Shown here: one piece after another, positions 1 to 40,500 of the stretch
Layout: each line of letters begins with the position of its first letter
Numbering within the stretch: position 1 is the stretch's first letter
Source of the DNA: Magallana gigas
Taxonomy: Eukaryota
Assembly: GCF_963853765.1 (NCBI RefSeq)
Contig: NC_088858.1
Location: 7,936,001 to 8,000,000 of the forward strand
Direction of reading: 5' to 3'
DNA length: 64,000 nucleotides
Notes under the pieces: generated by a model
Databases searched by the model: none
What the model was told of the DNA's origin: nothing
The model's input: the letters and a program-made list of their open reading frames with translations, nothing else
Position numbers and translations under genes: made by a program

Positions 1-498
1 ATGCACAATTTCCAAGAAACACTTTTAAGACTATAAAGGCAATCATGCATGGTTTAATGTTGGGGGCCAGATAACAAGTTATTGATAGTTTAACAGGAGG
101 TGAAAAAACAATTCTCAACAGGGAATCCATGGACTTGAAAGTCAAAATGATCATTCTTGAGACCAGAGCAGATCTCCTGACTGAATTTATTTTACCCATT
201 CTCTTCCTTTTCCAGTCAAAAACCTGACTCAGTGGCATTTAAGCAGAGTGGATGCTTGCAAATGCTTGCCAAAATTCCCAGAAAACAAATTTTTAGTTGC
301 AAGCACCTGCTCTGCTAAACACGCCTCTGAAAACCTTCTGACAGAAATAATTCTGTTTAGATGTGGAAATTATTGCATTACTTATATCATTCACATTAAA
401 AAAAAAAAAATCATTTCCATTTTTTTTTAGGATCATTAATATATATTATATTTAGTCAAACCAAACAGCTATAAATATTTTCCTGCTTGTATTTAGAT

Positions 499-3400
499 AT
501 GTCCAATAATAATTCGAATGGTTACTCCTCCAATGGTTCGTTGGTGGTTGAGACCCATCACCACTTCCTAGACGAGCTGTACAAAATGATGGTTAAAGAT
601 GTTTATGACGGAGGGAGAAACCGGGACTCGAAAGTGGTGGAATTCAAACATCCCAAAGAGTTAGAGGCCTTGATGGATCTAGGGCTTAATAAGGAGACAT
701 CAGATGATAATCTACTGAAAATCTGTCAGGACATCATCAAATATAGTGTCAAAACAGGTGATTTGTTTTCTGAAATTTTTGAAGCAATTATAAGTACATA
801 TTGTGTATTACCAGTGCATACTTGACATTATACAGAAATCATTTTATATGCTAAAATAATAAATTGTAAACTGAGTAATAAAGAAATATAAAGTGTTTAG
901 AAAAATTGAAAATGAAAAATAAACTGGTACATGTTAGTACATTGTATTAGGTTAGAATTATTAAATCATTTTAGGGAATCCCCACTTCTTTAACCAGTTA
1001 TGGAGTGGACTGGATGATTACAGTTTGGGAGGGGCCTGGCTCACTGAGGTCCTGAATACAAGTGTGTAAGTCTATGTACTAGTGTGTAAGTACAAGTCTG
1101 TGTACAAATTTAGGTGCAAGTGTAAGTACAAGTGTACCAGTATGTACAAGTGTATGTAATGGGTGCAGTTTGTAGGTAAAAATGTATGTTCAAGTGTATG
1201 TCCTACCTTGAGAAGCAGGGTCCTCAGTACAGAAATGACTCGAACTGAATTAAAGAAGTACTAAGTAGAGAGATGTACTCAAGTGTAGTCTTCAGAAGCA
1301 AGAAGTACAGCAATGTCCTCAAATGTAGTCTGTAGAGGCACTAAAAAGAGAGATGTCCTCAAGTAATGTCTCTAGAAGCACTAATTACAGAGATATCCTC
1401 AAGTGTACCATTGTCTATAGAAGCATTTAGTACAGACATATTCTCAAGTGTAAGTCTTGCACATATTAAGTATCCTTCAGTGAGGTTTGTAGAGGCAATA
1501 ATTACAGAGATGTCTACAGCAGTAGTCTGTAGAGGCACTGAATTTGAATTATTATAAGAACCGGTACAGATATCTCAAGTGTAGTCTGTAGAAGCACTGA
1601 GTACAGAGATGTCCACTGTGAAACACACATTTCTTAATTACATTTACCGGTAAACATAAATAAAGACATTCCAGTGATGTTTGTACCTTGTTTTCTTCTC
1701 AGATATACATATGAAGTGTCACCTGTGTTTACATTAATGGAGAAGACACTGATAGAAAAAATGTTGAATCTCATTGGCTTCAAAGATGGGGATGCCATTT
1801 TTACTCCAGGTTTGTAAATGGTCTTCATGTTTTAAGTCCAACATCTTACCAAAATTTGATATACTTTCATGTAGAGAAAATGGATTAACTTCTAATCGTA
1901 CCAGTATGCTATATATATCAGTTTATAATATTCTTATGTCATGTTTTATGTGCTGTAGGTGGTTCCTTGGCCAACATGTATGCTTTGAACGTTGCTCGAT
2001 TCAAAAGGTTCCCAGATGTTAAGAAAACGGGGGTGTATGGTTTGCCCAAACTTTGTGTGCTTACTTCTGAAAAGGTTTGATAATTATCATTTTATAGCTG
2101 AAACACTTTTATGTTATATTTTATTTGTTAAAAAATATTTTTTTACACATTCATGATGAAAACTTTTATTAGATGTCAATTTGAAAATCATTAAACAACT
2201 TCATTATCAAATAAAGCATTTTTTCTTTAAATTTACCTGGGATGTAAATTCACTATGCTATAAATGGCTCAACAAATTCTTTTGTCAGGGTCACTACTCC
2301 ATTAAGAAAGGAATGGCTTTCCTAGGACTTGGTTTGGATAACTTAGTTAATGTCAAGGCTGACAGTAAGGGAAAGATGGATGTCCAGGACTTGGAGGACA
2401 AAATTCTTCAACTACAGAGTGAGGTAAGATATGATATTCAAACGTGTTCTGTGCTGTAGCTATTTTAAGGTCTCATATTTCCTTTCACATGTTTTCAACA
2501 AGGTTTGGAAAATTAAGCTTGAACATTATAATTTGTAAATTCATTGTCCAGGTTGATGAAAACTACATGTAAATGGGTAGTAATTTAATTTTGCTTCACA
2601 ATCAAAGACATAAGATTTACAATAAAATAGAATGAACTGTTTGTTAATTGCAAAATTGCATGTGAAACAAACACCACAGTTGAGCTCAGTACAATTTTCT
2701 GCTTGCTGATGAATTTTCCAGTCCAAGGTTCCCTACTTTGTGAATGCCACTTCTGGAACCACTGTGTATGGGGCGTACGACCCACTGGATAAGATAGCTG
2801 ACATCTGTCAGAAGTATGGTCTCTGGATGCATGTGGATGGGGCTTGGGGAGGCAGTGCCTTGTTGTCCAAGAAATACCGGGCCCTGATGAAGGGCATTGA
2901 TAGGTGAGGTACTAAAGAGACTATATTAACTATGCATTTATGTTACATTTATGGTACGTTTACAGTACATTTACATTACATCTACTTTACATTACATTTA
3001 CATGTAATAAAGAAGTTAAAAATCATTTTAACCATTAGCTTTCTCATAGCCAGAAACTTAAGGACAGATATATTTGCTGACTGTGGGCCAAGTTGCTAAA
3101 TTTTCTCATCTCTTATATACAGTACCGATTAGACCCAACCTAACACCAGAGTTTACTTTTGGGGTTTATTAGGGGTTTACTCTTGGTTTACTTTTTGAAA
3201 ATTTGGGTCCACTTGTGGTTTACTTTGGGTTTACTTGGAAATTGCTCTTGAGGACAACTGAACGCAATGAAGTGTAAAACAGATTTGTCTTTTATCTTAC
3301 CACCCTACTGCCTGTAATTCCTTCCCCTTGTATATTTCGAATACACAGTTAGCGTCTGCTTTCAGGGGTATATTTTTTACCGGGTTTATTCGCTGTGTCC

Positions 3401-8895: not shown

Positions 8896-11800
8896 ATGCC
8901 TTGGACATTTCCATGGACAGAATTTTTGAAGAAAAGAGCATGTCGATACCTTTTACAACATTATTTGGGACAGTTTTTGAAAGAGAAACTGTCTCTAGAT
9001 CAACTGAGTGTTGATCTGTACAATGGAAGAGGCTCGATCAAAGATTTGGAGCTGGATGTGGAGGTACCGTTTATATTTTGAGTTGTCGGAGCTTTATTCA
9101 ATTTGAATGTGTCATGGGTAATCTCGGGCAAGACATGGACATGGGGTCTTGCATTATTCTGTTATAATTGAGAAAGGGAACTTAAAAGAGCAGAGACAAT
9201 AATTTACTCAAAGTTCAGATGAATTAAAAAAAATATAATAAGTTTCACATGTGCAATTAAATTTCATTTGAGGCCACCCATGTTAAACCATCATTTTAAG
9301 ACTGGGGGGTTTTTTTGTCCCGTAGACATGCAAGTCGGTCTATAATAATGTTGTGTCGAATCATATTGGATCATATGAACAGTCACCAATGCAATATGTA
9401 CATGAAGTTTGGTGGTGAAGTGCTTGAACATATTTAACTCTATGCTTTCAGGCTTTGAATGAAGCCTTGGATTCCAGCAGTGTACCACTAGAGATAGTGG
9501 ATGGCTTCATTAACCAAATCTCCGTGTCTGTTCCCTGGACCAATCTGATCCAGAGCAGCACAGAGATGGAGATCCAGGGACTAGAGATCACAGTACAGCC
9601 CAAACAGCGCATGGAAAATGGTGGGCAAAACTCACAATATAATACACATGTCATATTCACTTTACTGTGGAATTATATATTTTTTCCTTTATTTCTTTCT
9701 ATTAGTTATTGTGACAATTTATTCTAGACTATTTGAAATAAGTGTCATTGATGAAAAGTTTCATGTGAATATTTGCAAATTTTCAATAAAGACAAAATGA
9801 ATTTTACCATGATCTGAAAAACTTTGATACATGTTGTAATTTACTATGAACACTGTGCTTCATATAAAATATTTGCTTTTTAAGAATACTTAAATACCAG
9901 CTAATATTTGTGTATAATTATTATTTCTGTGTTTTCAGTGGGGGGCCTGGAGACCATGTTCAACAGCATGTGCAGCATGACCAGCAGTCTACAGATAGCG
10001 GAGGACTGCCTCAAGTCCACATCAGATGCAGACCAGGGCCAGGACCTGGGCACACCTTTTGAGGGCGTGCAGAAGTTTGCCCAGACCATTGATTCTGGTG
10101 AGTAAGACCTATGGTGAAATGGAGAAATGCCTGTAGAGATATTCCAACCATACATCAAACTTTTAATGAATTAAGCTTCCTTTATTGGTGTCAGGGTTTT
10201 TGGCCTATTATAAATTGGTAATTGGTATTTGTGTAAAATAGCCATAATTAGCTTAGACAGAATTTTAATTAATCTGCGTTATAAAGGACTTTTTGTGAGC
10301 TTTGTGACTATCAAAGTTAAATTATGTTTAGTTATTAAAAGTTTAACCTTTTAATGTTTGGTGATGTATGTTTAATGTTCATTGCATACATTGTGCATTG
10401 AAAGATAAGATGTTATTTTCAAATTACTTGAAAAAATCACAAAAGATGAGAACACATGTATATTAATTAAACAAGGAAATACCTTCTTAGTTGATCAAGT
10501 TTTACGTTTTTTCTTAACATATTTTTAAAAATTGTAAAATCTTTATAGAGAAAAAATCTTTCATTAAAAAAGAATGGAATGCAAGATAGGAATAACGTAA
10601 ATGATTACTGGTATTTTAAATTTTATTTTGCATTTTATTCTTTTGGACGGCAAGATAGCAACACACATCTGTACACATTACAAACATTCTCCGATAACAT
10701 GAGAAGAAATAACCAGAAGTTCCTGGTTGGTGTATGAAATTAAAATTCAATACAAGGAAACATTGCTGAATTGATAGGAATAAGATTTGATCAAATAATT
10801 TACGTTTCCGTGATTGATTTCAATCTCTTACAATTAGTAAAATGCTTGTTATTTCACTCTGATTGGACATATCTATTTATAGTGCTGTGCAGGGTGAAGG
10901 TCACCTTGATTGACACAGTTGTGAGGGTGGAGCACCTCCCTGACTCAGCAGAGAAGGGCGTGGCACTTGAAATCAAAATCAAACGGTGATTATTTGATAT
11001 TCTACAAGTGGAAACTTGTGTATAGATTGATAGAGGAAACTGCAATTTGTTTCATTGAGATCTCCACAAAATGAACTTCTTTCTAATTTAATCTTTCGGA
11101 TATACTTATTTATGAAATGGATAAATACTTCGGATCTGTTCTCTGAAAAAAATCTTGGAACAAGTGAAAAAAAAATTCCATTCATTTAAAGTTTATGAAT
11201 TGATTTTGTTGCTATACAAGCATATGTAGGTACATATCTCTCAATACGGACTAACAGTTTTCTTTCCACTTCAGAATAGAGTACTTTGACGACATGGCGA
11301 AGGAGGAGGGCAGTCCAGTGGATGATTCCTCCAGAACCACGTGGGAGCCAGCAGCCATCGCCCACAAGAACCTGCTGATAGACGGCATGCAGATTCTGTG
11401 TGACGAGTTCAGTCGCCCCACTCATCAGACCCCCTCCAGAATGTTCTCGTCTGACTCGTACCAACAGGTCTTATCTACCATGGTCATGTATCTGATGTTG
11501 GATGTATATCTATAGTTTATGCTTTGTTAAAATTCTAAATGAGGAAAGCTTATGAAATAATCTTTTAATTTAAAGTTCATGTGTTTCTCTGTAAAGGAAA
11601 ATTTAGATAAGGAATCTTTGAGGTAATGATGACCATGTATCCTATTATAAAAGTGTGCTCTTCTTCATATCATTATTCTTTAATTATAACACTGGTAATT
11701 AAAGGATTTCATATATTTTTTAAGCTTTTTTAATACAACATCAAAGAAATTGTAAAGCACACTCTACCTGTGTCAGTTTTTGCGCAGATTTTAATGGATG

Positions 11801-12475
11801 CGTATTATCTAGTATATAATGTTTCATGTGATGATGCATTTGGTTGTACAGTTTACTTTAACAGTTTATCAGGATACAGAAAAAGTACAAAAATTAAAAA
11901 AAATTAACTGTATTGGTTCATTATATCATTTTTCCATCACTCATACAAACCATTCATTCTATCTCTGTGTGGTTTGACTTTTTTCAGACTTTCATGTCCA
12001 CTACAAGTTCCCCACCCTCTCCACTGGACAATCAAGGTGGGACAGTCCCGGTATCGGAGGTCTTCTCTGACCCGGTACAGATTGCCGGATTCACAGGAAA
12101 GTCCAGTCTGAAAGTCAAACTCAAACAGGAGGAAGGCGTGCAGGGGCCAAAGGTATATCAGTCAGTCAGCAAATTGTCCTAACCCTCTAGTGAATATCCT
12201 AGCTCTATATCACATTCAAGGTTGTCAGTAAGCCTTTTTTACTGTCAACTGTTTACAAGAAGTGCACAAGTTTTGCACATATTCAAAATACCTGGTAATA
12301 TAATGCACATTATTAGGGTCCACAAGTATTACATGTATATGGCTCTGAAATGAAATCGGGGATAAATAATCATGAAAAACTGAACAAGAATTTATTTATT
12401 TAAAGATGTCCATAATTGTATATGTTATTACATACCATATACATTATTACTTATTAGGTTAGTTACTGACTCACT

Positions 12476-12512
<37 letters not shown>

Positions 12513-12529
12513 GAGGCGAAGCCGAGCCG

Positions 12530-12562
<33 letters not shown>

Positions 12563-13834
12563 AGTGAGTCAGTAACTAACCTAATAAGTGTTTTGTTTTC
12601 CCGAGGACTATTAAGTGACATATTTATTCACAAATAGCGATGATCATGGCACAGCCATGTACAAGATGCCTAACATCTCGTCCAATTTAACTCATTTAAA
12701 CTCTTCAAAATTTTCAATCTCACCTTTCAATACTCTTTAAAAATCTTTGCTTCACCCATGTTTACCTACAATGTTTTGTTGCTATTCATTTGTAAATGTT
12801 TTCTCCCTTTTCTCTGAAGAGATTTGAGCAAATTTCGACGCTGCCATTTTGTTCTGCTTCAGACAAAACAATGTGACGTCAATATTCTAAGGGCAACTAC
12901 TCTAATTTTAAAGAATTTCAAAGGGCGACTACTCCTTATACTTTAAGAACTTACGGCATGCGGTATATGTATTGAATACTATGAAATGTCGAAATGAGTA
13001 AGCGAAGCGTTGACCAATGACGGCCATATTGCCTAATATTAATTCTCACAGAACAAATATAGAGATATATGAGGCAATCACGTGCTATGTTTAAACCAAT
13101 GTAAATGTGACATTTCAGTCCAAGGGAAAACAAATATGTGTATACTGCTATAGTAAGTATCAGGCTTGGGGTAATGCTAAATGTAATGGTAATGCATTGC
13201 AATGCATTACATGTTTTCAAAGTAATGCTAGTAATGTGTAATGCCACAAAATTAGCATTACAAGTAATGGTAATGTAATTAATTACTTTCCAAAATCTAA
13301 TGTAATGCTGGCATTACATGGCATTACTTTGCATTACTATGCTTATTTATGCATGTTCTCTTTTAAAAATGTGATAAAAAAATGAATATTTGAAATTAAA
13401 TTTGATTAAATTTATTTATAAAGAAGAAAGAAATAACTCTTGAGATAAAAATGTTTTAATGGTATTATTAAAAAAGATTTTTAAAAAATTCATATTTGAA
13501 TTGTTAATATTACTAAATATAACAGCACAATTTCATAACATTTTTAAGAGTGTTGTTATTAAGAGTTTTTAATCATTTAAACAATTTACTCCAATAAGTT
13601 TGCACTTCAATAAGAAATGTGTCAACAACACACTATGTCCCCAGGATAATCTAAGTATCAAAACAATCTATTGTTATAAGAAGTGCTAAACACCCCAATC
13701 CCCTTCCCTTCGCTATGTCCCAATAGAGTAGGAGACACATGCACCTTTAAAAGCATAATGAATGCAATGTCCATCCATGATGAAAATAAATATCACTTCC
13801 AATATTATAAACCATTTGAAAATAATTTTACTTA

Positions 13835-13887
<53 letters not shown>

Positions 13888-16800
13888 ATCTTAAGTACTC
13901 TGTACATTAGTTTGGACTGATAGAAAATACAAGATTCATGTATTTTTTCTATTATTGCACTTAATATATCCTTAGATAAAGATTGTCAAACAGTACTTTT
14001 CAGTCCAAGCTTCGACTCCTCCTGTAAAACATTTATTTAGTATAGCTCGGAAGTTTTTTTAAACTAACAGGATGCAGTTAAAAGATGAACCCTTTGAAAC
14101 TTCGATCATAAAGTGAAACAGCAATCTTTTGTCTTACAGTGTCCTTAGTAGAAAGAAATACGATTAAAACACAGTATCTTAAGAAATATAACTGGGAAAA
14201 ACCATCTGTTTATGAATTAATACAATTAAGTGTCCAAAATTATAGAGATTTGTGTAATCTGGGGAAATATCTCTATTTAGCTTTTAATAACCGCAACATT
14301 ATTCCTTAAATTGTTTTTTGTTATGCATGTAATTCTGTGTCTCTATTTCGTATCCTACATTGTATCAAGCCAAATGTCAATAAATATCATTTTACTTATT
14401 TGATACGCATGTTGTTCATAATGCCACAAGATGATTATATATTGAGCAAATAAAGAATGACTCTTGTATAGTCATTGAATTTGAACCTGATACTGAGCAT
14501 GAACCTGTAGATATGTTAAAGAGTGTTTTATATTTGAAACATTTGCAAAAACTCTTTCTTAGCTTTGGTTTTTTAAAACAAAGTAATGGTAATGGTAATG
14601 CATTACTTTACTCATGTAATGGTAATGTAATGCATTACTTCAAGAAAATCAAGTAATGGTAATGGTAATTTAATGCCCAAATTCATGAAGTAATGGTAAT
14701 GTAATGCAGCATTACTTTACAATGTAATTCGCCCCAAGCCTGGACTAAGTATTCCTGTTATTAGGACAAAAAATGTTAATTTCTTAAATTGTAGTTTCTT
14801 GCTTGTGCCACAGTAAGATATAAAGTTATAGAAAACTGGCATCTTATTTCCTTTACAGTGAATAGCAAACATTTGAAAACCGTAGTAATGTAAAAAGGCA
14901 GTTTTATATACATCATTTAACCTTAGAAAATCAGTCAGAAGAATATAGATTTGTTGAATAAAGTATGCTGAAAATTCAAAAGTGTCATGACATGAACAGC
15001 TTCATAATAATATTAAAAGTTGAGTAACTGGGCATACCCAAAACACATGGCGCTTTCCTAGGGGAAAAGTACCAGTAATGTGCAGATGTTTTGTCTTTGA
15101 TAAAACTGTTTTAAGGGTCCTAGCTATAGTTTTGTATGTTCTAGGTGGAGATTGAGCTGGAAGTTGGAGGACTCCATTTGTTGCTCAGTCCCACACAGTT
15201 CCACGCTGTCCTTGACCTTGTTAATGGCTTCTTGTCGCCAAGTAAGGAACTGAATACCAGAAAACGCCTATTGTCATGCACATGTTTACATTGTTTATGG
15301 AAATAGTTAAAAAAAATGTAGGCTGATACTTAATAGTGGGGGATTCCTTAACACAGTGTATGTGCCAAACTAGGGATCAAGCAATATCAAGTATCATATA
15401 TTGCAGACCCAATTGGGTTAACCTTGCTATTTTGAATTTAATGTTAATTGACCTAAAATTTGACATAAGATGTACTGGGCATGACATTTAAACAACTTAC
15501 GAAGTAAATATAGATGATTTTTATTAGCATATATACATGTTATACATGTATAGTGTGGCTCATTTTGTGCCTATATAATGGAAACATTTTGATAAGTTTT
15601 CTTCTGTTTAGAATCCAGCAATGAGGGCAGGGAGCGGGCGAGGAGTAAAAGTAAGCCAATGAATGAGGAGGATTACAGGAAGGTGGAGACGGAGTTACAG
15701 AAACAGCTCCACTCGGACCGCTTCCACCCCAGCCACATGGACACACTGACTGCCACCGATCTCCAAGACATCATGACACATTCCATTGGTAATTTGTCAT
15801 TGTGAAACTGTCAACTCTTCTCTGATAAAGGAGACTTGTAGAGGCAGATTTTCAATGTAAAATAGTCAATTTCTTAATAGAGAAAGATTCTGGTGAGCTT
15901 TTAAACCAAGAGCCACTCAGGGATTTATTAGTGACTCTCAAGTGAGAATTTTAACTGAGCAATCAAAGCTTCATGTTCTCTGATTCATTATTTACATATC
16001 ATTTCTTTTAGCTGGTCATTTTTAATGATGTTGATCATTTGATTTATTACATTGACATTACATTTCTTTTTGTAGGGGATGAGCAGTATTTTTCACTGGC
16101 TCCTGACCCAATGGAATCATCAGTCAACAGTAACTTTAGCTTGGCTTCAGGCAGATCTGGAAGCACTGTAACCAGTAAGATAAAAAATATGCACACCCCT
16201 TATCACATGCATTTTGTTGATTGGTTGTAGCAATGTTGTTGGAATAGTTTAGCTTCTCGAGAAGAGCATAATTCACCATGCCTTTTGCCCTCTGTGAATA
16301 TTATCCATATCTTTACCATACCTTTTTCCCTCAGTGAATATTATCCGTATATTTACCTTACCTTTTTCCCTCAGTGAATATTATCCATACTTTTACCTTA
16401 CCTTTTTCCCTCTGTGAATATTATCCATATCTCAGGCAGCTACCAGTAAACCAAGATATTATCTGGATAATGTAGTGGTTTTTAGCTCACCTGGGGCATC
16501 TGTCCGTCTGTAAACTTTTTACTTTTATGACTTCTTCTCCAGAACCACTGGGCCAATTTTAACCAAACTTGGCACAAAACATTATTGAGGTGAAGGGTTT
16601 GTTAAAAATAAAGGGCTATGCTCCTTTTGAAGGAGAGATGATTAAGAATTAATGAAAACTTCTTGGTAATATTTGAAAATCTTCTCAAAAAATCTACTTG
16701 CCAGAAAAGCTGTAATTTATATGGAAGCATCCTCAGATAAAGTAGATTCAAGTTTGTTCAAATCATGTTCCCTCGGGTAGGGTTGGGCCACAATGGAGAG

Positions 16801-19800
16801 TCAAATTTTTACATAGGAATATATTGAGGAAAATCTTTAAGAAGCTTCTCTTTAAAAACAAATAGGCCAGACAAGCTGTAACGTCTGTGGAAGCATGTAT
16901 AGGTAATTTATATTTAAGTATATTTAAATCAAGATCCCAGAAGTTAGGGGGCCACAATAGGGGTCAAATTATTACATAGGAATATATAGAAAAACCAATT
17001 AATTAGAAAAGCTGTAACTTGTGTGGAAGCATTCTCAGGTAATGCTGATTCAAGTTTGTTCAAATCATGATCCCCAGGGATAGAATGAGGACATAATGGG
17101 AAGGGGGTGGTGAATTATAACATAGGAAATGAATTTGATGATTCTCAAAACTCAAATGTTATGATATATGGTATTACCCATACATAAGCATCTTGACATT
17201 TGTTGATTCTCAGGTGTTGGCAATTTTGCGACACACAAGGGGTTCATAGTTTGATGTAGGGTTATATTTTTATGAACAGTTGTTCAAGATCTCCTTGAGA
17301 AATGCATTGCTCAATATTTGATGTGACTTTAAAATCATCTAGTTATTGTTTATTATGGTTATTGTTGTTCAGACAAGCGATGTGGCCCATGGTCCTCTTG
17401 TTTGAAATTGATATTCTATTGTGGTATTAACTTTTTTGAGGTTGATATCTGAAGTACATTTGAAAATGACCTTCTTTTGGGTGACTTAAGAATCTTGTGT
17501 AGTGATCAATCTATAGAAGTAGATCAAAGGATCTGATTTAATGATATTTTACTTTGGGTTCTTCACTATGTATTCGATCTGTTTTAATAATGATTTTATA
17601 TATTGCAGCCACACGTTCGGGGCCAAGAAAAGATGGGAAAGCTGCAAAAGGTGAGTACAACTGACTCAACGTCCAACATCCATTTATAAATGTATGAATT
17701 TTTGCTTTTGTGTTTATGACTCCAACTTAATTATACATGTTGTACAATGGAACTGAAATTTTACAAATTCAATATATAATACACTGTAGAGCAGGCTTGG
17801 GGCGAATTACATTGTAAAGTAATGCATTACATTACCATTACTTCATGAATTTGGGCATTAAATTACCATTACTTTATTTTCTTGAAGTAATGCATTACAT
17901 TACCATTACATGAGTAAAGTAATGCATTACCATTACCATTACTTTGTTTTAAAAAAGTAAAGCTAATAAAGAGTTTTTGCAAATGTTTCAAATATTAAAC
18001 ACTCTTTAACATATCTACAGGTTCATGCTCAGTATCAGGTTCAAATTCAATGACTATACAAGAGTCATTCTTTATTTGCTCAATATATAATCATCTTGTG
18101 GCATTATGAACAACATGCTTATCAAATAAGTAAAATGATATTTATTGACATTTGGCATGATACAATGTAGGACACGAAATAGAGACGCAGAATTACATGC
18201 ATAACAAAAATCAATTTATGGAATAATGTTGCAGTTATCAAAAGCTAAATAGAGATATTTCCCCAGATTACACAAATCTCTATAATTTTGGACACTTAAT
18301 TGTATTAATTCATAAACAGATGGTTTTTCCCAGTTATATTTCTTAAGATACTGTATTTGAATCGTATTTCTTTCTACTGAGGACACTTTCAGACAAAAGA
18401 TTGCTGTTGCACTTTATGATCGAAGTTTCAAAGGGTTCATCTTTTAACTGCATCCTGTTAATTTGAAAATCTACCCAGCTATACTAAATAAATGTTTTAC
18501 AGGAGGAGTCGAAGCTTGGACTGAAAAGTACTGTTTGACGATCTTTATCTTAGGATATATTAAGTGCAATAATAGAAAAAATACATGAATCTTGTATTTT
18601 CTATCAGTCCAAACTAATGTACAGTGTACCTAATATACAAGAGAGAGAGAGAGAGAATAAGTAAGTAGTAAAATTATTTTCAAATGGGTTATAATATTGG
18701 AAGTGATATTGATTTTCATCATGTATGGACAGTGCATTCATTTTGCTTTTAAAGGTGCATGTCTGTCTCCTATTCTATTGGGACATAGTGAAGGGAAGGA
18801 GATTGGGGTGTTTAGCACTTCTTATAACAATACCTTGGTAGATTGTTTTGATACTTAGATTATCCTGGGGGCATAGTGTGTTGTTGACACATTTCTTATG
18901 GAAGTGCAAACTAATTGGAGTAAATTTTTTAAATGATTAAAAACTCTTTATAACAACACTCTTAAAAATGTTATGAAATTGTGCTGTTATATTTAGTAAT
19001 ATTAACAATTCAAAAATGAATTTTTAAAATCTTTTTTAATAATACAATTAAAACATTTTTATCTCAAGAATTATTTCTATCTTCTTAAAAAATAAATTAA
19101 GTCAAATTCAATTTCAACTATTCATTTATTCATCACATTTTTTAAAGTGAACATGCATAAATAAGCATAGTAATGCAAAGTAATGCCATGTAATGCCAGC
19201 ATTACACTAGATTTTGGAAAGTAATAAATTACATTACCATTACTTGTAATGCTAATTTTGTGGCATTACACATTACTAGCATTACTTTGAAGACATGTAA
19301 TGCATTGCAATGCATTACCATTACATTTAGCATTACCCCAAGCCTGCTTTAGAGCAATTCCTTTTAGCTAATCTGAGCCAAAGGCTCAAGTGAGCTTTTC
19401 TAATCAAAATTTACCCGATGTCTGTCATCATTGTCATTGTTGTCATCATCATTGACACGTACCATACGCTTTCCTTTTTTCATCCTCTTCTCCAGACCAA
19501 TTGTGCCAATTTTATCCAAACTTGGCAAAAAACATCCTTGGGGGAATGGCTTTCAAGTTTGTTCAAATGAAGGGCCATTTCCCTTCAAAGGAGAGATAAG
19601 TTAGAAGTGAAAATTGGGTTCAATATTTCAAAAATTTTCTTCAGAACCACTGATCCAATATGAACTTCAACTTATTAATTAAAATCACTTAAGGGGAAGG
19701 GCTTTGAAGTTTGTTCAAATAAAGGACCATTTGCTCTTCAAAGGGGAGATAATCAGGTAACACTGAAAATTGTTTGGTGTTTGAAAATTTTACTTCCCTA

Positions 19801-21072
19801 GAACCATTGGATCAGTTTCAACCAAACTCGGCACAAAGTATCCTTGGGGGTGAACTTTCAAGCTTGCTCAAATCAAGGGCCAGTTCCCCTTCAAAGGGGA
19901 GAGAATTAAGAGGGAGTAAAGATTCGGTGAGGAAATTCAGAAATTTTCTTCTTCAGAACCAAAATGCCGTAGTAATGTTTTATCAGACTGGATAATTTGG
20001 CTTTGATTCCAAACACTGCCGCTAGCTGATTATGGTTATGACCATCCTTTGCATTGTATACTAGTAGCAATAAACCGCATGCATGTTGTGTCAGTGTGCA
20101 TTATAAATGAAACCGAATAATACTGTGTTACCCTTGTCTGTCTGTCCATAACAAAAATTTCCATCACATTTTTCTGAGCAACTATTAATCACAGGTGTTT
20201 GAAATTTGAACACACTCTTTGTTAAGACTTGGCATATGGTGGGATCCATTTATGTACCAACCGGACATCAACTTCCTATTAAATGATGACTTTGTCTATT
20301 TTTTGGCCAAAATTTTCAAACATATTCATCAAAGATTTCTTAGCAACTATTCATTGCAGATGCTTAAAAATTTAACACACTCTTTGTTTAGGCATGCTTT
20401 TTGATAGGATTTATTCTGAACCAATCAGATTTCAACTTCTTGTTAAATGTCAACTTTACTAATTTTTATATATTCACATCAGAGTGGGGGTATTGGCTCA
20501 CAGATTTCTTGTTATAAAAGATTGACCATTAAAGGTCTGCAGGTTTCTTTTTACCAAAAGTTCACAATTTTTAGCCCCTAGAGGGGTACCTGGAGGTAGG
20601 GTAGAGATAACTCTAGATTCTTCTGACTCATGCCATACACACCCTCCTCGGAGGCTTCCCATTCCTATTAATGAATTGATGTTTGCAAACGTCAAATAAA
20701 AGTGGGACCATGTCAATGCACTTTGAAATTTTTTTCAAAGCGTGTTGATATCATTGATATTAACACACTTTTTAAAAAATATTGTGCAGGGGTTATTAGT
20801 TGTTAGAAAACAAAGAAAGGATGTGAAAACATCAGAACCAAATGGTATGAATTCCATCTACGTCCTTTGATAGGTCCTGGAATATTAGCTAATGTTAGTT
20901 TTTACATAGTTATACACATCTAGTGTGATTATTACTACAATGCTTCCTATTGTGCAATAGCCATTGTTCGAGTTTTCATGGTCTGGAAGACAACGCAATA
21001 GAAACGCTGTGGGAGCACGGTACAAACGCAGAAGAAACGTCAAGAGAGCGCGATGAATGCAGCAACAGCTCT

Positions 21073-21107
<35 letters not shown>

Positions 21108-21779
21108 AGGCACTGCAATACAATAATTAAAGCTATAAATGTCATCTTGTGAAAGATTTTTTGCTGTTTAAAAACAGTGTAACATCGTGTAGTTTACGAT
21201 TTCATTCTAACCCACCAATTATTGATCCTAGAATGACATGAATAGTGCACATCTTGGGATTTATTGAGTGTACATAAGGACCTACTGACTACTGTTAAAG
21301 TATTAAACCCCTGTCACACCGGAGCTGCGTCCTCACGGCAATTCCACTGCGTCCTTGAATAATATAAAAATGCCAGGGTAAACGCAGTAGAGTCTCCTAC
21401 AGTGCTGTAACTACGCAACAGCATCTTCGTTTGTCACAATAGAATTTGAACATTTTAGAATGCCATGCGACGGCGCGCACTTTGAACATGCACACGTAAC
21501 TTTGAACGCGCCATGGCTCAGCGTTTTGATAAACATGCCATAGAAGCGGAGTGATGTCGCCGTGACAGCGCCGTAAGGTCTCCAACAGTGCCTCGAGAGG
21601 TCCATTGGCGTCCTCAAAGAATGTAGCTAATCGCAGTGTAGACTCAGTGATAAGTCAATTGTCCTTGCACAGAGACTTCTCGGAGTCCTTTGAGATCTTA
21701 CTGTGTCTCTATCGCGCTCTCACTGTTCATCCACAGCGTTTGAACAAGTCGTTTTTTCATTTGGCTGCGTTCCCAAGGG

Positions 21780-21824
<45 letters not shown>

Positions 21825-22507
21825 GGCACTTTAAATGTTTCAATCTTTAGTCTCCTCCTGAGAAAGGATTACATTTTACATTTACCAAAAAATACTTTAA
21901 GCAATCTTGCAGTTCACATACATTTATTAAATCAACAGTCTATCGTTACTACAAAATCACTTACAAATGACTGACAACAGGCATCAGTGAATGGCCCTTT
22001 CAATTCAGGAAACATGGCAAAGGAAACATTGCAAAAAACTCTTTGAAAAAGTTCTGCATTAATCAAAATATTTACAGTAGCTGGTATAATACGTTAGATA
22101 ATAAAAAATAATCTACATTAAACACATCGTTTTATTGTTATTGTATTTGATTAATATTTTATTTGGGAGGAAAGGGTTAATATTTATTGTCGGATGATTA
22201 AATCACATTCACAAAACTTATTACATATAATATCAAACCTTGCATACAAGATAACTTGACATTATAAGAAAACACCTACTTAGTAGTAATCTGTAACTTA
22301 ACAATGAAGTAATTCCACTCTTGGTTAATTGCATGATCTTTTGCCTTTTCATTTGCCTATAAATAAAATACATGTAAACAATTCAATAAAAAATTCATAT
22401 ACTTTGTACATGTACTTTTCAACAGTGCTTCCTGATAGAATAGAAATATGTGCATATTAAGCACTTGAAACAAAAGTGTTTTGTCTTCTCATGAAGAACA
22501 TTATCAG

Positions 22508-22539
<32 letters not shown>

Positions 22540-25500
22540 GGGTCTTCCGTCCGATTTTTGAATAGATTAGATTAAACTTATCACTTCAAAGATAAAATCG
22601 TAGATCTAAGCGAAAAATAGTAAAAAAAAAAAATTTGTGGCAATCTGGGCTTGAACCCGGGTCACCTGGGCCATGTCCACTACTCTATCGACTGAGCTAC
22701 TCAGACTCTTGCTTCAGAACTTTGATGCTTAATTTCTCGAGAATGCCTGAATTACCTGAAAGCACCTTGTTGCGAGCAACAAGTGGGTCTTTTGTTAGAT
22801 TTTGAATTGATAGGTTTCAATTAAACTGTTGATATTTGGTACGATTTACTATCATATTAACTTCCTTTTAAACTAATTTTTCAGCCTACACTGCGAAATG
22901 CAGATTTCCAGAAAAGGTCATTTTTAAACTTCAATATCTCTGCAATGCGTTGTCCGATTTTAAAACGGTTTTTAGTTTTGTATTCAGTACAAAAATGTCA
23001 ACAAAACGCTAATGCTTTAAAATTCAAAAAAATCGAAATATTAGAATCACTTCTGGTGACGACCGGAAGTGACGGACGACCTGCTCATATTAAAATTTGA
23101 TAAGTTTAAAAACATATTCTGATGGAAAAAAAATTGTAGATTATTTGATTTAAAAAAAATTTTAAACACAATTTTCCAAAAATGCTGTTTGAGCGGACCG
23201 GCAGTGAGGGACGATCGTAGTTTTACCTGATCGGCCCTAGAAATTCAAAAATCTATTATTCCTGAAACTTTCAGTTTTCTATCTTTAATCGTTTTTGCGA
23301 AAAAGGGAGGACAAGATCACTTTTTACAAAAAGAAAAACGAATATAACGGCCGACCAGAAGTGACATCATCAACAAAAATGTACATGATAAAAGACCTTG
23401 ATATTTTGTATTATTCGTGAAATTTTCATAAAAATCCGTTGTAGCATATTTGAGATATTTGAGTTTTAAGAAAAATGTTAAGAAAAAACAGAATAATAAT
23501 AGTGAAAAATAGAGAAAAAGAAACCTAACAAAAACAATAGGGTCTTCCGATGGAAACGGAAGACCCTAATAAAACAAATATGGTACAACACAAAAATTAA
23601 CAAGAAATTGATACAAATGCATGACGAATTACATGGGAGATAAAATAGCAATACCCAAATTGACACCAATATTAGCAATCGAAATTTTAACAAAGCATTT
23701 CTTTAAACAAATCTCTAAACCTGTTATCACTAAAGAAGTAGACAAAAGGATTCAGAATGCTATTAATTGCACCAAAATGTGCAAGCACACCAAACAAAAC
23801 ATAGGTGGATCTATCAATAGCAATGTAAGGGTCGTAATAATTCTTATACGCAACCAATGTGTTTATCGTGACAAGAGGGAAGTAGCTGACAATGAGAAGA
23901 ACCGTTATGATGCAGAACGTAAGTGTTATTTTGACGTTGTCATCTTTCGCAGCTCGCCTAGCAGCTTTGCTGTCTTTTGAAGTTGCATCCTGATTCTTAT
24001 TACCAAAATTTTGACCATCTCTTAATTTTTTTCTTGCTGCTTTTTGAGCCAGAATTGTCTTCCAAATGATTACCTGGAGGCATACTACAATAATGGCTAA
24101 GAGAACAGATGTCGTGAGGTTGGAAAGGTTGTAAATAAATGGCCAAACCTTGCGTTCACCTACGTTTCCAATCATACATTGGGAAATGGTACGTCCTTCC
24201 ATTTTCGTGTACCAGTTGCCAACCATAAATGGAAATGGGAGACCAGTCATGCATGCAAAACCAAAACAAGCGAGACAGATGCGTTTTGCGAAAGAAACAG
24301 ACATCTGGGACTTCAGTGGATGGCATATCTTCCGGTATCTCTCGATTGCAATGACGAAAATGATGCAGTAAGATGTAGTGCTTACAATGTAAGCGGCGAA
24401 GTAGGTAACTCTGCACTCTATGTCACTGGTATCGTATGATGGAAACCACAGCTGTTCTACCTCTTTCATGAGATGCGCAAAAGAGGTGCTTAGATCAAAA
24501 TAAGCCAAAATAAAGACAAAGATTTTGTACGTAGAATCGTATTGAATTTTACGAAAAATGTTCAGGACTAATGAATTTCCTACTATTCCTACAACACATA
24601 GAAATAGAATGAATATCCCCAAAGGCAGGCGATTCATCCTTTCTTTGACAATCTCGGGATGGGTCACTACAGAAGCATTTTGACCCATGATGTTCTTCAC
24701 AGTTTGAATTCCTTTGTGCTCGTTAGTTAGAGACATTGTTATTTATACCAGTGAGTTGGTCACAAGTGCATGTCAATGTAATGTAATTTCATAAACTGGA
24801 GATTCATTTATCGTTGAGAACTCTTTTTAGTATCTGCTAATGATACTTTTTCCCATATTCATAAGAACTACTTAAGGTTAATGGTTTATTTATTTTCTTT
24901 ATACATGAAAGCAATTCAGTTCTTCTCCTTTAATATTGGAGTAATGAATTAAAAAAGCAAACTTGCACAGCAATATACTTACCATCATGTAAAGAAACAA
25001 AACCCTTAATGAGGAAAAGTTGCATTAGTGGCCAAGAAATGGTAGAATCTTTTGTCAGCAAATTATACACCGTGCTCATTTATGACTACTGGTATGAGCT
25101 CCCTCGCAGTTAAATTTTATGGTACTCTCTCCTTTACATGCAATGCTAAAGTGTAGAGATAAGTAATTATGTACCACATGCATGTCGAAGATTTCCATGT
25201 CAGAAACTTACCATTCTGTAGTCTATGCTATCTTCTTAACCAATGCTTTTCAAGTTTTTAGGTTACCTGAAAATTAATTTAAACCATTTGAATTTGCCCA
25301 GTCTTAAATTTGCTCAGTTACAACGAGAGCAGAAGTGGCAAAAATAAACCAAGAGGGAATTTCCCTGTTTACAGTAAATTAAATCTTAAGAAATCTTTAA
25401 ATTTTCTTTACTCCCATAAATATTTAAATAAAATGAATTCATGGTAATGATGTCCATGAAGCCCTATTCCAAAAGTGTGAAATGAAAGGCCCCTCAGGGT

Positions 25501-37500: not shown

Positions 37501-40500
37501 ACATACAAACACACCAGGCATTCTTCATGGTTTAACGAAATACAGTTTTTTCTCTGAAATATATATTTTTTCCAATGAACAGAATGAATATCTAATTATC
37601 AGAACTAATTAGCGATGAGAATAACACAGATCGATTTCTAATGTGTCACAATGGTTTAGCAAGGACATAATTTGCTAAGTGATATCTTTTCCTTGACATA
37701 ATTCGGACATTGTTGCATAAACATGTTTGTTATACTTTCATGTTAAATACTGAAATCTGATTGGTTAAGACGCAGTTAATAATATTTACTATTACCCTCA
37801 GCGTTAGCAACGCACTTGGCAACGGGTAACATTAAAAAATGTTACATGCGCGAAAATTATGCGCGTACGGTTCGCTGTAGAATTCACGTTATTCCTATGT
37901 AAAAGCAGTAAAATTTTCTTAAAAATTTTAAAAAAGACATTCAGTATAACAAAATAAATAGTGCCTGTTTGGGAGGATAACAGTTGAAATTGACACCCCT
38001 CGAAAACCATTGTCAACCTCCGCTTCGCGTCGGTTGACAATGGTTTTCTCGGGGTGTCAATTTCAACTGTTACCCTCCCGAACAGGCACTATTTATATAA
38101 TAGTTGTATATGTTAAAAGAGTCAAGAAGACTACTCAATATATATAGACATGAAAGTGGGTTTGACGTGAAGTGAAAGTGAAATTGCCTCATAAACGGAG
38201 CCTTTCAGATTCTAGTTTAGATACATCCATGTATCAAGGAATAAACAAGGGAGATCCAGGCCCCGTAAAACCGTGGATCCACCACTGCTTTATACTCAAT
38301 GCATATAAATATATCGCATAATTTGCATGAAGTTTTTGAGATGAGAAATGTTGTTAGAAATTAAGATCCTCTCGCACACATATTTTTACATTAATATTTT
38401 TGCATATAATCCTTACACAACTTGCATACTGTTCTAAGATATGTACACATTATAAGCACCATGATTCTTGTATAATAAGGTAATAGGACGTTGAAGAATT
38501 AGTTTAAAATGGGATATTACCACAATTCGCTTGTTTTACAACAGTCAATATAAAGTGTAATTAAGCTATGTACCATAATACACTGGTAACTATAGTTCAT
38601 TCAAGTGTAATTATTGCCGTTGAATCCCTAACACTCATTGCTATCATCGTAACTTCTTCATGTAGTTTTTCTTTTTTTTAAATGTTGAATAAAATGCACA
38701 ACATTTAGATTTCAACCTATTTTGTTGTCTCTATTAAGTAACATTCTAGCCCCGGAACAAATTTAATTTCAAAAGTAATATATTTGTACCTGCATGTACA
38801 TGTAAGAGCAATCAGCAATTTTCATAGTAAATTGATCAGCTTTGGTAAAAACAGTTTGAAATGTAATTTTTTTTGGTATATTCAGCATTTTTTATGTGAA
38901 GACAAAAATGTGTCTTTATGACAATAATTTATTATGCTCTAGTTTAATAAAGATTAAAGCAGCTGATTAAAGGTTTTAATATATTGAATAAAAAGTCTTA
39001 TAATTCTATGTGTTTAATTAATATTATGAAAAAAGCAAATTGATTTTTGGACTTGATTGTAAATCTTTTTTTTTTCATTACTGCATTAGAATTTGAATAT
39101 CAATGATACTATATGAAATACAGGTATTAACTTAATTGCTTATGAAACCTTTAAGCTATTTATGGTGGAGTTTTGAATAGAGAAAAAGGTATTATCCACA
39201 GACATAATATAATTTGAAACATTTTCAACTCATTATTGTTGACACTCCCATGTACCCAGTACATGTTTTACTTGGAAGGGATGGGAAGAAGTTTATTGGA
39301 GGGTTAAAATTGACCCCCATTTGTTTTGTATCCATCCACAACCACTGGAATATCAATACCATAGGAATCCATTGGTACACACACAGCTCCATATGGAAAT
39401 AGCACAAATATTGGTAAACTCCATTTCTCAATGTATTTGATTTTACACCACTGTTCCAATATTTTCTTCAAATTGTGGTGCTTCAATATTATCTTGAATC
39501 TCACTGTACACTTTGTCTGTGGGACTCGATGAAAATCCATGATTTAGGAAGCCACCCCCAGAGGAATGGGACATAGGGTCTCTGTTTGGGGTCTGTGGGA
39601 GGGGTCGAGTCTCCACGGCATTGGTGTAGTGGTCTGCTGGAGCCATCATTCTGTTGACTTCATTCACATAGTTAGGTTTTGGGGCAGTAGGCATTACAGT
39701 GTATCGACCTGCATCTCGAGACCCACCCTCAGGCTTATGTTCTGGAGGAAGTTTTACGCTTAGCTGTTTGGGGTCTCTTCCTCCTCCCCCACCTGTGGCC
39801 CCTTTTGTTGGATAGGGATCATTGCTTACTGCTGTGTCATCAATGTTTTGGTAACTTCCTGCAGATAACCCTGATAATCTTGACGAATCAAGGTTCCCAT
39901 TGGATATGGTCATAACTTGCATTTCACCATTGGCTTTCCTCACAAACACTTTGGGTTGACTGGTTGGACGTGGCTGGTTTTGATATCCAATGGGTGTGAT
40001 ATGACCATTGGGTAGAGGTAGCGGTGGTTTGTCTTCCTTTTTCTTCCTACAGATGACGAAAACAAATAACAAAACAACGATGAGAGCTATAAATAAAACA
40101 CCTCCAAGAACACCCCCCACTATTTCAACTGTTTTATCATCTGAACCAGTGTTGGCTTCTGTTGTGGCAACATCTGTTAAGGAACCTTGGGTAGTGCCTG
40201 TTGGACAGGATATCAGGATTTGTTTTGATGATCCTGTCAATTCAATGAAGAAACAGATCTCATAGCGAGACCCGGGGTTAAGTCCAGTTATGGGATGATC
40301 CCTTTTGGATTTGTCCAAAGGAAAACTTTTCTCCTGAGGATTGTTTATGCCTAACTGTTTATATTGCACCAAAAAGTTCTTTAGATAAGTCATATCTCCA
40401 CTGACTGTCCAAGAAATCACTATTGTATTTTTTGTTTCACTTGAAATTCCAAACCGAATATCTGGTAATGGGACAACAGAGGTTGTTCCAATTGTTGAGG

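What the first reader, a model, noticed from the sequence alone, without database searches (positions are those of the whole stretch)
13161..19346. Inverted ~1.56-kb hAT MITE pair brackets ATG2 exons 7-10: predicted circRNA/dsRNA switch
Seen: two near-identical copies in opposite orientation. Copy 1 ends 402 nt before the exon-7 acceptor (15145) and copy 2 starts 141 nt after the exon-10 donor (17650), with 3049 nt between them. Established: reverse-complementary repeats in flanking introns drive back-splicing and ADAR editing. Inference: a 415-nt circATG2 (97+177+99+42 nt). Linear skipping of the block would join phase 0 to phase 1, causing a frameshift and NMD, so the pair could act as a rheostat on ATG2 output. 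At the DNA level it is also a substrate for inversion, or for mobilisation of the four exons as a 6.2-kb composite via the outer TIRs.
Basis: partly seen in the sequence, partly recalled or inferred. Interest (0 to 1): 0.72.

Follow-up and report, generated by a model that had tools for sequence, protein, structure and literature searches.

The report
Inverted transposon pair flanking ATG2 exons
Two young copies of a 1.6-kb hAT-like DNA transposon sit in opposite orientation in the introns on either side of exons 7-10 of the Pacific oyster ATG2 gene. This is a real, textbook set-up for intronic double-stranded RNA and exon circularisation, but nothing available shows it is used, and the sister oyster assembly lacks both copies.

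Summary
Copy 1 (13161-14742, +) and copy 2 (17792-19346, -) are 95.9% identical and are the only inverted pair of 100 nt or more in the 64 kb. Each copy has an 11-bp TIR, about 28 subterminal GTAATG repeats and its own 8-bp target duplication fitting nTnnnnAn, so they are hAT-like and non-autonomous. At 1.56 kb they are large for a MITE.

The window is Magallana gigas chromosome 6 (xbMagGiga1.1). Its ATG2 gene maps exactly onto 41 coding exons. Exons 7-10 (97+177+99+42 = 415 nt), the 402/141/3049-nt distances and the phase 0 to phase 1 frameshift are all correct.

New here: the Crassostrea angulata assembly has precise empty sites at both positions. The insertions are therefore genuine, young and lineage-specific or polymorphic, not conserved.

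The two arms can form a stem of about 1,490 bp (-2313 kcal/mol), looping out exons 7-10. The circRNA, ADAR-editing and "rheostat" reading is a reasonable prediction from a well-known mechanism, but it is untested and untestable here. All transcripts found carry exons 7-10 linearly. Composite mobilisation is unlikely, because the outer ends are two copies of the same end.

Verdict: an ordinary, well-described kind of locus, with a useful natural presence/absence contrast.

The parts
13161..14742 (+). Copy 1 of the non-autonomous hAT-like element (1582 bp) in ATG2 intron 6. It has an 11-bp TIR (CAGGCTTGGGG), 28 GTAATG/CATTAC hexamers all within the terminal 200 bp of either end, an internal (CT)23 run, and no coding capacity.
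13153..13160 (.). Left target-site duplication of copy 1, GTAAGTAT.
   Evidence: single-copy target in C. angulata
14743..14752 (.). Right target-site duplication of copy 1, G(AC)TAAGTAT: the 8-bp target with a 2-bp insertion.
17792..19346 (-). Copy 2 of the same element (1555 bp), reverse orientation, in ATG2 intron 10, 141 nt downstream of the exon-10 donor.
17784..17791 (.). Left target-site duplication of copy 2, CTGTAGAG.
   Evidence: C. angulata has this octamer once with no element
19347..19354 (.). Right target-site duplication of copy 2, CTTTAGAG (7 of 8 identical to the left one).
11988..12152 (+). ATG2 coding exon 6, ending in phase 0. Intron 6 is 12153-15144 (2992 nt).
15145..15241 (+). 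ATG2 coding exon 7 (97 nt). Its acceptor would be the back-splice acceptor.
15612..15788 (+). ATG2 coding exon 8 (177 nt).
16076..16174 (+). ATG2 coding exon 9 (99 nt).
17609..17650 (+). ATG2 coding exon 10 (42 nt, 14 aa), with a strong donor AAG|GTGAGT that would be the back-splice donor. Intron 10 is 17651-27792 (10,142 nt).
27793..28061 (+). ATG2 coding exon 11, entered in phase 1. The start is exact; the end is approximate.

Best explanation
These are two bona fide, evolutionarily young insertions of one family of about 1.56-kb non-autonomous, hAT-like cut-and-paste transposon. They landed in opposite orientation in introns 6 and 10 of the Magallana gigas ATG2 gene. Shown: the element anatomy (11-bp TIR, subterminal GTAATG repeats, separate 8-bp target duplications), the exact exon context, and the absence of both copies from the C. 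angulata assembly. Computed: in one pre-mRNA the arms can pair into a nearly continuous stem of about 1,490 bp that loops out exons 7-10. Inferred by analogy with other animals: the stem is hyper-edited by ADAR. In the minutes before the acceptor of the 10-kb intron 10 is transcribed, the stem may also bring the exon-10 donor next to the exon-7 acceptor. That would yield some 415-nt circular RNA and some exon-7-10-skipped, frameshifted mRNA. The most likely status is a neutral or mildly costly by-product of transposon activity with at most a small effect on ATG2 output, not an evolved switch.
For: Pair and ends. Only inverted pair of 100 nt or more in 64 kb, and no competing cross-intron complement in 8000-29000. 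TSDs GTAAGTAT and CTGTAGAG both fit the Hermes/hAT target pattern nTnnnnAn (PMC10368747). 28 GTAATG/CATTAC hexamers are confined to the terminal 200 bp, against about 1 expected. No Pfam domain in element ORFs and no Rfam family. The window is identical to GCA_963853765.1 OY970750.1. C. angulata GCA_025612915.2 has precise empty sites for both copies and no inverted repeat of 60 nt or more in the same 20 kb. Gene model. Frameshift and stop codon on skipping. Duplex energy is -2313 kcal/mol with 1487 intermolecular pairs, against -342 and -356 for self-folding; perfect runs reach 122 nt. Known mechanism: reverse-complementary matches promote both back-splicing and exon skipping (PMC8330042), and ADARs act on such stems (PMC8938519). 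Young nearby inverted repeats are the main A-to-I targets across animals, in a survey that included C. gigas (PMC9989829). Oysters have ADAR1 (PMC6651903, PMC9044936). Inverted hAT and nMITE pairs are among the commonest (with LTRs) in newt circRNA flanks (PMC11872487). C. gigas makes thousands of circRNAs, peaking at 300-600 nt (PMC13685108).
Against: No RNA evidence of any kind could be consulted, so pairing, editing, back-splicing and skipping are all inferred. Intron 6 may be spliced out co-transcriptionally before copy 2 is made, which would prevent pairing. The hAT assignment rests on ends and target sites only; no transposase-bearing relative was found. Only one comparator assembly was available, so whether the copies are fixed, polymorphic or heterozygous in M. 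gigas is unknown. All ATG2 products found carry exons 7-10 linearly. That shows normal splicing predominates in assembled transcripts but says nothing about minor circular forms.
Confidence: 0.75

Rival explanations
1. One reading: the pair is a working circRNA/dsRNA switch (rheostat). It diverts a meaningful share of ATG2 pre-mRNA into a 415-nt circle or an NMD-targeted skipped mRNA, tuned by ADAR.
For: The geometry is favourable. Arms lie 402 and 141 nt from the splice sites, the loop is 3 kb, the downstream intron is 10 kb, splice sites are strong, and no competing complement exists. Skipping gives a premature stop. The mechanism has precedent (PMC8330042, PMC8938519, PMC11872487).
Against: Both copies are missing in C. 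angulata, so there is no conservation. Annotated and RNA-derived ATG2 products all include exons 7-10. A search for short predicted proteins carrying the back-splice reading found only two genomic contigs, though this test has low sensitivity. Most repeat-flanked exon blocks yield only trace circles.
Confidence: 0.07
2. The element belongs to another 8-bp-TSD superfamily (P-like, for example) rather than hAT.
For: No transposase was available to test. The fifth TIR base (CAGGC) departs from the hAT YARNG motif as I recall it. Subterminal repeats also occur in P and CACTA elements.
Against: Both targets fit nTnnnnAn, the TIR is 11 bp and starts CAG as in Ac and hobo, and the subterminal hexamer arrays match hAT anatomy.
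Confidence: 0.12
3. The second copy arose by a local duplicative hop of the first (hAT elements favour linked sites), rather than by two independent arrivals.
For: The copies lie 3 kb apart and no other copy exists in 64 kb. Their 4.1% divergence is no larger than allelic divergence of the surrounding introns: 90-97% against C. angulata, 93-95% against Logan genomic contigs.
Against: Several indels and 64 substitutions separate them, which equally fits two different source copies. Nothing here can decide between the two origins.
Confidence: 0.35
4. The pair is an assembly artefact or a segmental inverted duplication rather than two transpositions.
For: None beyond the general risk with repeats.
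Against: Homology stops exactly at the TIRs. Each copy has its own different TSD, and the copies differ at 4% of sites plus indels. The assembly is 48x HiFi. The empty sites in C. angulata reconstruct the uninterrupted targets.
Confidence: 0.02

Closest known systems
Inverted-repeat (IRAlu-type) flanked exonic circRNA loci of mammals; reverse-complementary matches in C. elegans (PMC8330042)
   Same: Complementary transposon copies in the two flanking introns, close to a back-splice donor and acceptor. The expected outcomes are circularisation, exon skipping and ADAR editing of the stem.
   Different: The arms here are about 1.5 kb at 96%, five times an Alu pair, and come from a DNA transposon. 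No circular product has been observed. The host is a bivalve, where the dependence of back-splicing on intron pairing has not been shown in anything I could find.
Inverted hAT / nMITE pairs flanking circRNAs in the newt Pleurodeles waltl (PMC11872487) and hAT MITEs at poplar circRNA loci (PMC12595863)
   Same: Same transposon superfamily, same arrangement, same proposed role.
   Different: Those are genome-wide correlations with detected circRNAs, and minigene tests in poplar. This is a single predicted locus without RNA data.
Ac/Ds, hobo, Hermes: the hAT superfamily and its non-autonomous derivatives
   Same: 8-bp TSD fitting nTnnnnAn, a short TIR beginning CAG, dense subterminal short repeats at both ends, and internal sequence without a transposase.
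   Different: No autonomous partner has been identified, and family copy number is unknown. At 1.56 kb it is longer than what most authors call a MITE.

Membership tests
hAT superfamily (non-autonomous member) | 8-bp target-site duplication | tested here: met
   Copy 2: CTGTAGAG / CTTTAGAG. Copy 1: GTAAGTAT / G(AC)TAAGTAT. Both targets are single-copy at the empty sites in C. angulata.
hAT superfamily (non-autonomous member) | Target preference nTnnnnAn (Ac/Hermes type) | tested here: met
   Both octamers have T at position 2 and A at position 7. The pattern is as stated for Hermes in PMC10368747. Only two sites were available.
hAT superfamily (non-autonomous member) | Short terminal inverted repeats (about 10-25 bp), typically starting YARNG | tested here: inconclusive
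   The 11-bp TIR CAGGCTTGGGG is perfect in both copies. It starts CAGGC, matching 4 of 5 positions of YARNG, a motif I recalled from memory.
hAT superfamily (non-autonomous member) | Subterminal short repeats at both ends (transposase BED-domain binding sites) | tested here: met
   27-28 GTAATG/CATTAC hexamers per copy, all within 200 bp of an end and none internal, against about 1 expected from shuffles. Binding itself was not tested.
hAT superfamily (non-autonomous member) | A related autonomous element encoding a hAT transposase (BED finger, RNase-H-like core, hAT dimerisation domain) | not testable with these tools
   No oyster whole-genome search is offered. Element ORFs have no Pfam hit. 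Metagenome scans gave nothing or chance hits, and the ORF-based protein search found nothing.
MITE | Miniature size (commonly under about 800 bp) | tested here: not met
   1555 and 1582 bp. PMC12595863 notes there is no agreed upper limit.
MITE | TIRs, a TSD and no coding capacity | tested here: met
MITE | High copy number in the genome | not testable with these tools
   Two copies in this 64 kb and none in the 62-kb C. angulata locus.
Intron-pairing-driven exonic circRNA locus | Reverse-complementary sequences in the introns flanking the circularised exons | tested here: met
   Stem of about 1,490 bp at -2313 kcal/mol, with arms 402 and 141 nt from the splice sites.
Intron-pairing-driven exonic circRNA locus | Canonical acceptor and donor at the back-splice junction | tested here: met
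   AG before 15145 with a pyrimidine tract, and AAG|GTGAGT after 17650.
Intron-pairing-driven exonic circRNA locus | Observed back-splice junction (exon 10 joined to exon 7), RNase R resistant | tested here: inconclusive
   One indirect, low-sensitivity test was possible. A search of predicted proteins 76-241 aa long with the exon 7-10 peptide returned two hits, both genomic contigs reading exon 7 into intron 7. No RNA reads are accessible.
Intron-pairing-driven exonic circRNA locus | A-to-I (A-to-G) editing clusters in the paired arms | not testable with these tools
   No RNA data. By analogy only: PMC9989829 and PMC6651903.

The most novel reading that the evidence does not exclude
The insertion pair is a segregating cis-acting allele in Pacific oysters. 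Through stem-driven back-splicing, frameshifting exon skipping and ADAR-sensitive dsRNA, it measurably lowers or conditions ATG2 dosage, and hence autophagy capacity, relative to animals (or the sister taxon C. angulata) that lack one or both copies. The circle might even be translated: it carries a 147-codon ORF that starts at an ATG in exon 10 and crosses the junction.
Probability: 0.04. Interest if true: 0.55.

Novelty: new member of a known kind. Interest (0 to 1): 0.25.

Why it matters
If the prediction held, this would be a clean natural experiment in a mollusc. The same gene exists with both, and probably one or neither, intronic arms, which would allow a direct test of whether intron pairing drives back-splicing and exon skipping outside vertebrates, nematodes and plants. 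The gene is also central to autophagy. As it stands, it is one more example of a common consequence of transposon-rich introns. Its practical value is as a well-characterised genotyping and minigene target, not as a discovery.

Tried and rejected
(1) Looking for further family members or an autonomous partner. Two metagenome scans with TIR-based patterns gave 0 hits and then 2 chance hits without GTAATG repeats. A protein search with the 56-aa ORF conserved in both copies found nothing. Pfam on eight element ORFs gave nothing meaningful.

(2) Looking for other M. gigas haplotypes to genotype the insertions. Exact look-ups failed for the nested GPCR protein of the window, proteins P0262 and P0261, and a 98-aa ORF spanning the copy-1 junction. 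The C. angulata GPCR only returned the same assembly. Logan genomic contigs L007 and L008 cover 14965-16323 and stop short of both insertion sites.

(3) Indirect search for a back-splice product among predicted proteins: only genomic read-through ORFs. This negative carries little weight.

(4) The oyster circRNA paper PMC13685108 has no supplementary tables held, so ATG2 circles could not be looked up.

(5) Rfam on 11500-28500: no family.

(6) Segmental duplication or assembly artefact: rejected on the TSDs, the sharp homology borders and the empty sites.

(7) Composite 6.2-kb transposon: considered unlikely because the outer ends are L and L and the inner ends R and R. By my recollection of Ac/Ds alternative transposition, the two different ends are needed.
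Full report
**Where the window comes from.** The 10-kb stretch 11000-21000 is 100% identical to locus L003, which is GCA_963853765.1, record OY970750.1. The genome note names this as Magallana (Crassostrea) gigas xbMagGiga1.1, chromosome 6, assembled from 48x HiFi reads. The record position equals 7,936,000 plus the window position. The window has no N runs.

**Is the repeat there?** Yes.
- The repeat finder tiles 13161-14747 against 17787-19346 with arms of 39-608 nt at 92-100% complementarity.
- Aligning copy 1 with the reverse complement of copy 2, including 20 nt of flank, shows similarity beginning exactly at CAGGCTTGGGG and ending at CCCCAAGCCTG. The flanks are unrelated.
- Within the element there are 64 mismatches in 1545 aligned positions (95.86%; 23 transitions, 41 transversions) and 47 gap columns. 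The gaps are mainly a (CT)n tract of 23.5 units in copy 1 against a much shorter (CT) run in copy 2, plus 8-, 6-, 3- and 2-bp indels.
- Copy 1 is 13161-14742 (1582 bp, +) and copy 2 is 17792-19346 (1555 bp, -).
- A self-BLAST finds no other copy in the window, and this is the only inverted pair of 100 nt or more in the whole 64 kb.

**What the element is.**
- Each copy ends in a perfect 11-bp terminal inverted repeat.
- The hexamer GTAATG or its complement occurs 27-28 times per copy. Every occurrence lies within 200 bp of an end and none is internal, against about one expected from shuffles. This is the subterminal-repeat architecture of hAT elements, where such repeats bind the transposase BED domain (Hermes, PMC10368747).
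- The interior is 29% G+C and has no ORF above 75 aa. It has no meaningful Pfam match and no Rfam match.
- Copy 2 is flanked by CTGTAGAG and CTTTAGAG. Copy 1 is flanked by GTAAGTAT and G(AC)TAAGTAT. Both octamers fit nTnnnnAn, the Hermes target pattern.
- I therefore accept "hAT-like, non-autonomous". The defining transposase could not be tested, and 1.56 kb is beyond what most authors call a MITE, though no limit is agreed (PMC12595863).

**Proof of transposition and of youth.** The protein cluster of this ATG2 contains a member from GCA_025612915.2, which is Crassostrea angulata. Its locus, L002, aligns with the window on both sides of each copy but lacks both.
- At copy 2, the L002 sequence reads straight through a single CTGTAGAG.
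- At copy 1, it reads straight through a single GTAAGTAT.
- L002 contains no fragment of the element and no inverted repeat of 60 nt or more in the first 20 kb of the gene.

So these are two real insertions, each with its own target duplication. They arose on the lineage leading to this M. gigas haplotype, or are still segregating. Intron sequence around them differs by 3-10% from C. angulata and by 5-7% from Logan genomic contigs of other oysters. The 4.1% divergence between the copies is therefore within allelic range. It cannot tell whether there were two independent arrivals or one arrival followed by a local duplicative hop.

**The gene.**
- Pfam places ATG2_CAD/VPS13_N matches along the + strand.
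- A representative search with one exon retrieved full-length ATG2 proteins.
- tblastn with the Solemya, Crassostrea virginica and cluster proteins lays out the exons.
- The annotated protein P0259 (2053 aa) matches the window exactly over 41 coding exons, covering residues 1-2017.
- Coding exons 7-10 are 15145-15241, 15612-15788, 16076-16174 and 17609-17650, all with AG/GT borders. They encode P0259 residues 320-457 without a mismatch.
- The 42-nt exon 10, which is too short for tblastn with distant proteins, is confirmed by this protein and by RNA-derived Logan contigs of related oysters.
- Exon 6 ends at 12152 in phase 0 and exon 11 begins at 27793 in phase 1. The four exons total 415 nt. 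Joining exon 6 to exon 11 gives a stop after 18 codons.
- Intron 6 is 2992 nt. Intron 10 is 10,142 nt and contains an antisense GPCR gene.

**RNA-level potential.**
- Folded alone, the arms reach -342 and -356 kcal/mol. Folded together they reach -2313 kcal/mol with 1487 intermolecular base pairs and no intramolecular pairs. There are 25 perfect runs of 20 nt or more, the longest being 122, 115 and 81 nt.
- No other cross-intron complement exists between 8000 and 29000 to compete with them. The other inverted repeats there are local hairpins or microsatellites.
- The exon-10 donor is a consensus AAG|GTGAGT, and the exon-7 acceptor has a pyrimidine tract.
- The stem is therefore thermodynamically dominant and well placed.
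- Whether it forms depends on kinetics (inference). Intron 6 must survive until copy 2 is transcribed about 4.2 kb later. After that, the exon-10 donor waits for the 10-kb intron 10 to be completed, which favours back-splicing.

**What is known.**
- Pairing of flanking introns promotes both back-splicing and exon skipping (PMC8330042).
- ADARs bind and edit such stems and modulate circRNA output (PMC8938519).
- Across 22 holozoan species, including C. gigas, young repeats with a nearby inverted copy are the main A-to-I substrates (PMC9989829).
- Oysters have an active ADAR1 (PMC6651903, PMC9044936).
- In the newt, inverted hAT and nMITE pairs, together with LTRs, are the most frequent repeat pairs in circRNA flanks (PMC11872487). 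hAT MITEs flank tested circRNAs in poplar (PMC12595863).
- C. gigas gonads yield 5963 circRNAs, peaking at 300-600 nt (PMC13685108).

**What could be tested about function.** Very little.
- All thirteen ATG2 proteins compared (twelve of the 90% cluster plus C. virginica), among them eight from RNA-derived contigs, carry the exon 7-10 segment without gaps. Linear inclusion is therefore the rule.
- A search of short predicted proteins with the exon 7-10 peptide could have caught a contig spanning the back-splice. It found only two genomic contigs that read exon 7 into intron 7. This negative has low sensitivity.
- The one oyster circRNA paper found has no tables held.
- The absence of the pair in C. 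angulata shows the arrangement is not conserved. This argues against an evolved "rheostat" and for a by-product, possibly mildly deleterious.

**DNA-level ideas.**
- Inverted 1.5-kb repeats 3 kb apart can in principle recombine to invert exons 7-10. Nothing here shows such an allele.
- The composite-transposon idea is weak. Copy 1 lies L to R and copy 2 lies R to L. The outer ends are therefore both L ends, and the inner, facing ends are both R ends. hAT transposases handle the two ends asymmetrically (Hermes). By my recollection of Ac/Ds, macro- and reversed-ends transposition need one end of each kind.

**Verdict.** The functional interpretation is plausible in its weak form (some dsRNA, editing and perhaps trace circles) and unsupported in its strong form (a switch). 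It is a new member of a known kind and of low to moderate interest. The useful addition from this work is that a natural presence/absence contrast exists.

Noticed in passing
window 50606-51044 (ATG2 exon ending about 50641 and the intron after it): A 54-bp minisatellite of 8 units at about 94% identity begins inside an ATG2 coding exon and continues in frame into the intron. Seven of the eight units carry the same G|GTAAG donor at 54-nt (18-codon) spacing. One database model of this protein (P0262) is 54 aa longer exactly here. The array may therefore offer alternative in-frame donors or variable-length alleles.
   Followed up: partly
window 23687-24736 (-): An intact single-exon 349-aa rhodopsin-family GPCR ORF (7tm_1, E = 6e-29) is nested antisense in ATG2 intron 10, about 4.3 kb from copy 2. 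It is a called gene in the C. angulata locus but not in the gene list returned for the M. gigas locus.
   Followed up: partly
window 39443-42226 (-): A 927-aa leucine-rich-repeat plus fibronectin-III membrane protein gene is nested antisense in the 18-kb ATG2 intron between exons at 28656 and 47091. It is also present in C. angulata.
   Followed up: no
window 12445-13129: A 685-bp segment in intron 6 is absent from C. angulata. It starts with a 141-bp near-perfect palindrome (arms 12449-12517 and 12521-12589, 96%), so it is probably another young insertion. It ends only 31 bp before copy 1.
   Followed up: partly
L002 5526-6124 and 6249-7715: C. angulata has its own insertions of about 600 bp and 1467 bp in intron 6 that the window lacks. 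The second lies about 56 bp from the empty site of copy 1. This intron is a hotspot of insertion/deletion differences.
   Followed up: no
window 16271-16470 (intron 9); L002 9180-9581: A 40-bp tandem repeat has 4 copies in the window and roughly 10 in C. angulata.
   Followed up: no
window 16533-17079 and 19486-19906: Related interspersed repeats of about 150 bp lie in direct orientation in intron 9 and just downstream of copy 2 (69-81% identity). Being direct, they cannot pair in the RNA. The family was not identified.
   Followed up: no
exons 7-10 joined as a circle (15145-15241, 15612-15788, 16076-16174, 17609-17650): The hypothetical 415-nt circle contains a 147-codon ORF. It starts at an ATG in exon 10 in another frame, crosses the junction into the normal ATG2 frame for all 138 codons, crosses the junction again and stops after three codons. 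This is purely a sequence property.
   Followed up: partly
window 487-2459 (+): Exon-like ORFs of another gene lie upstream of ATG2. By eye the first resembles a PLP-dependent decarboxylase, but Pfam gave no hit for the piece tested.
   Followed up: no
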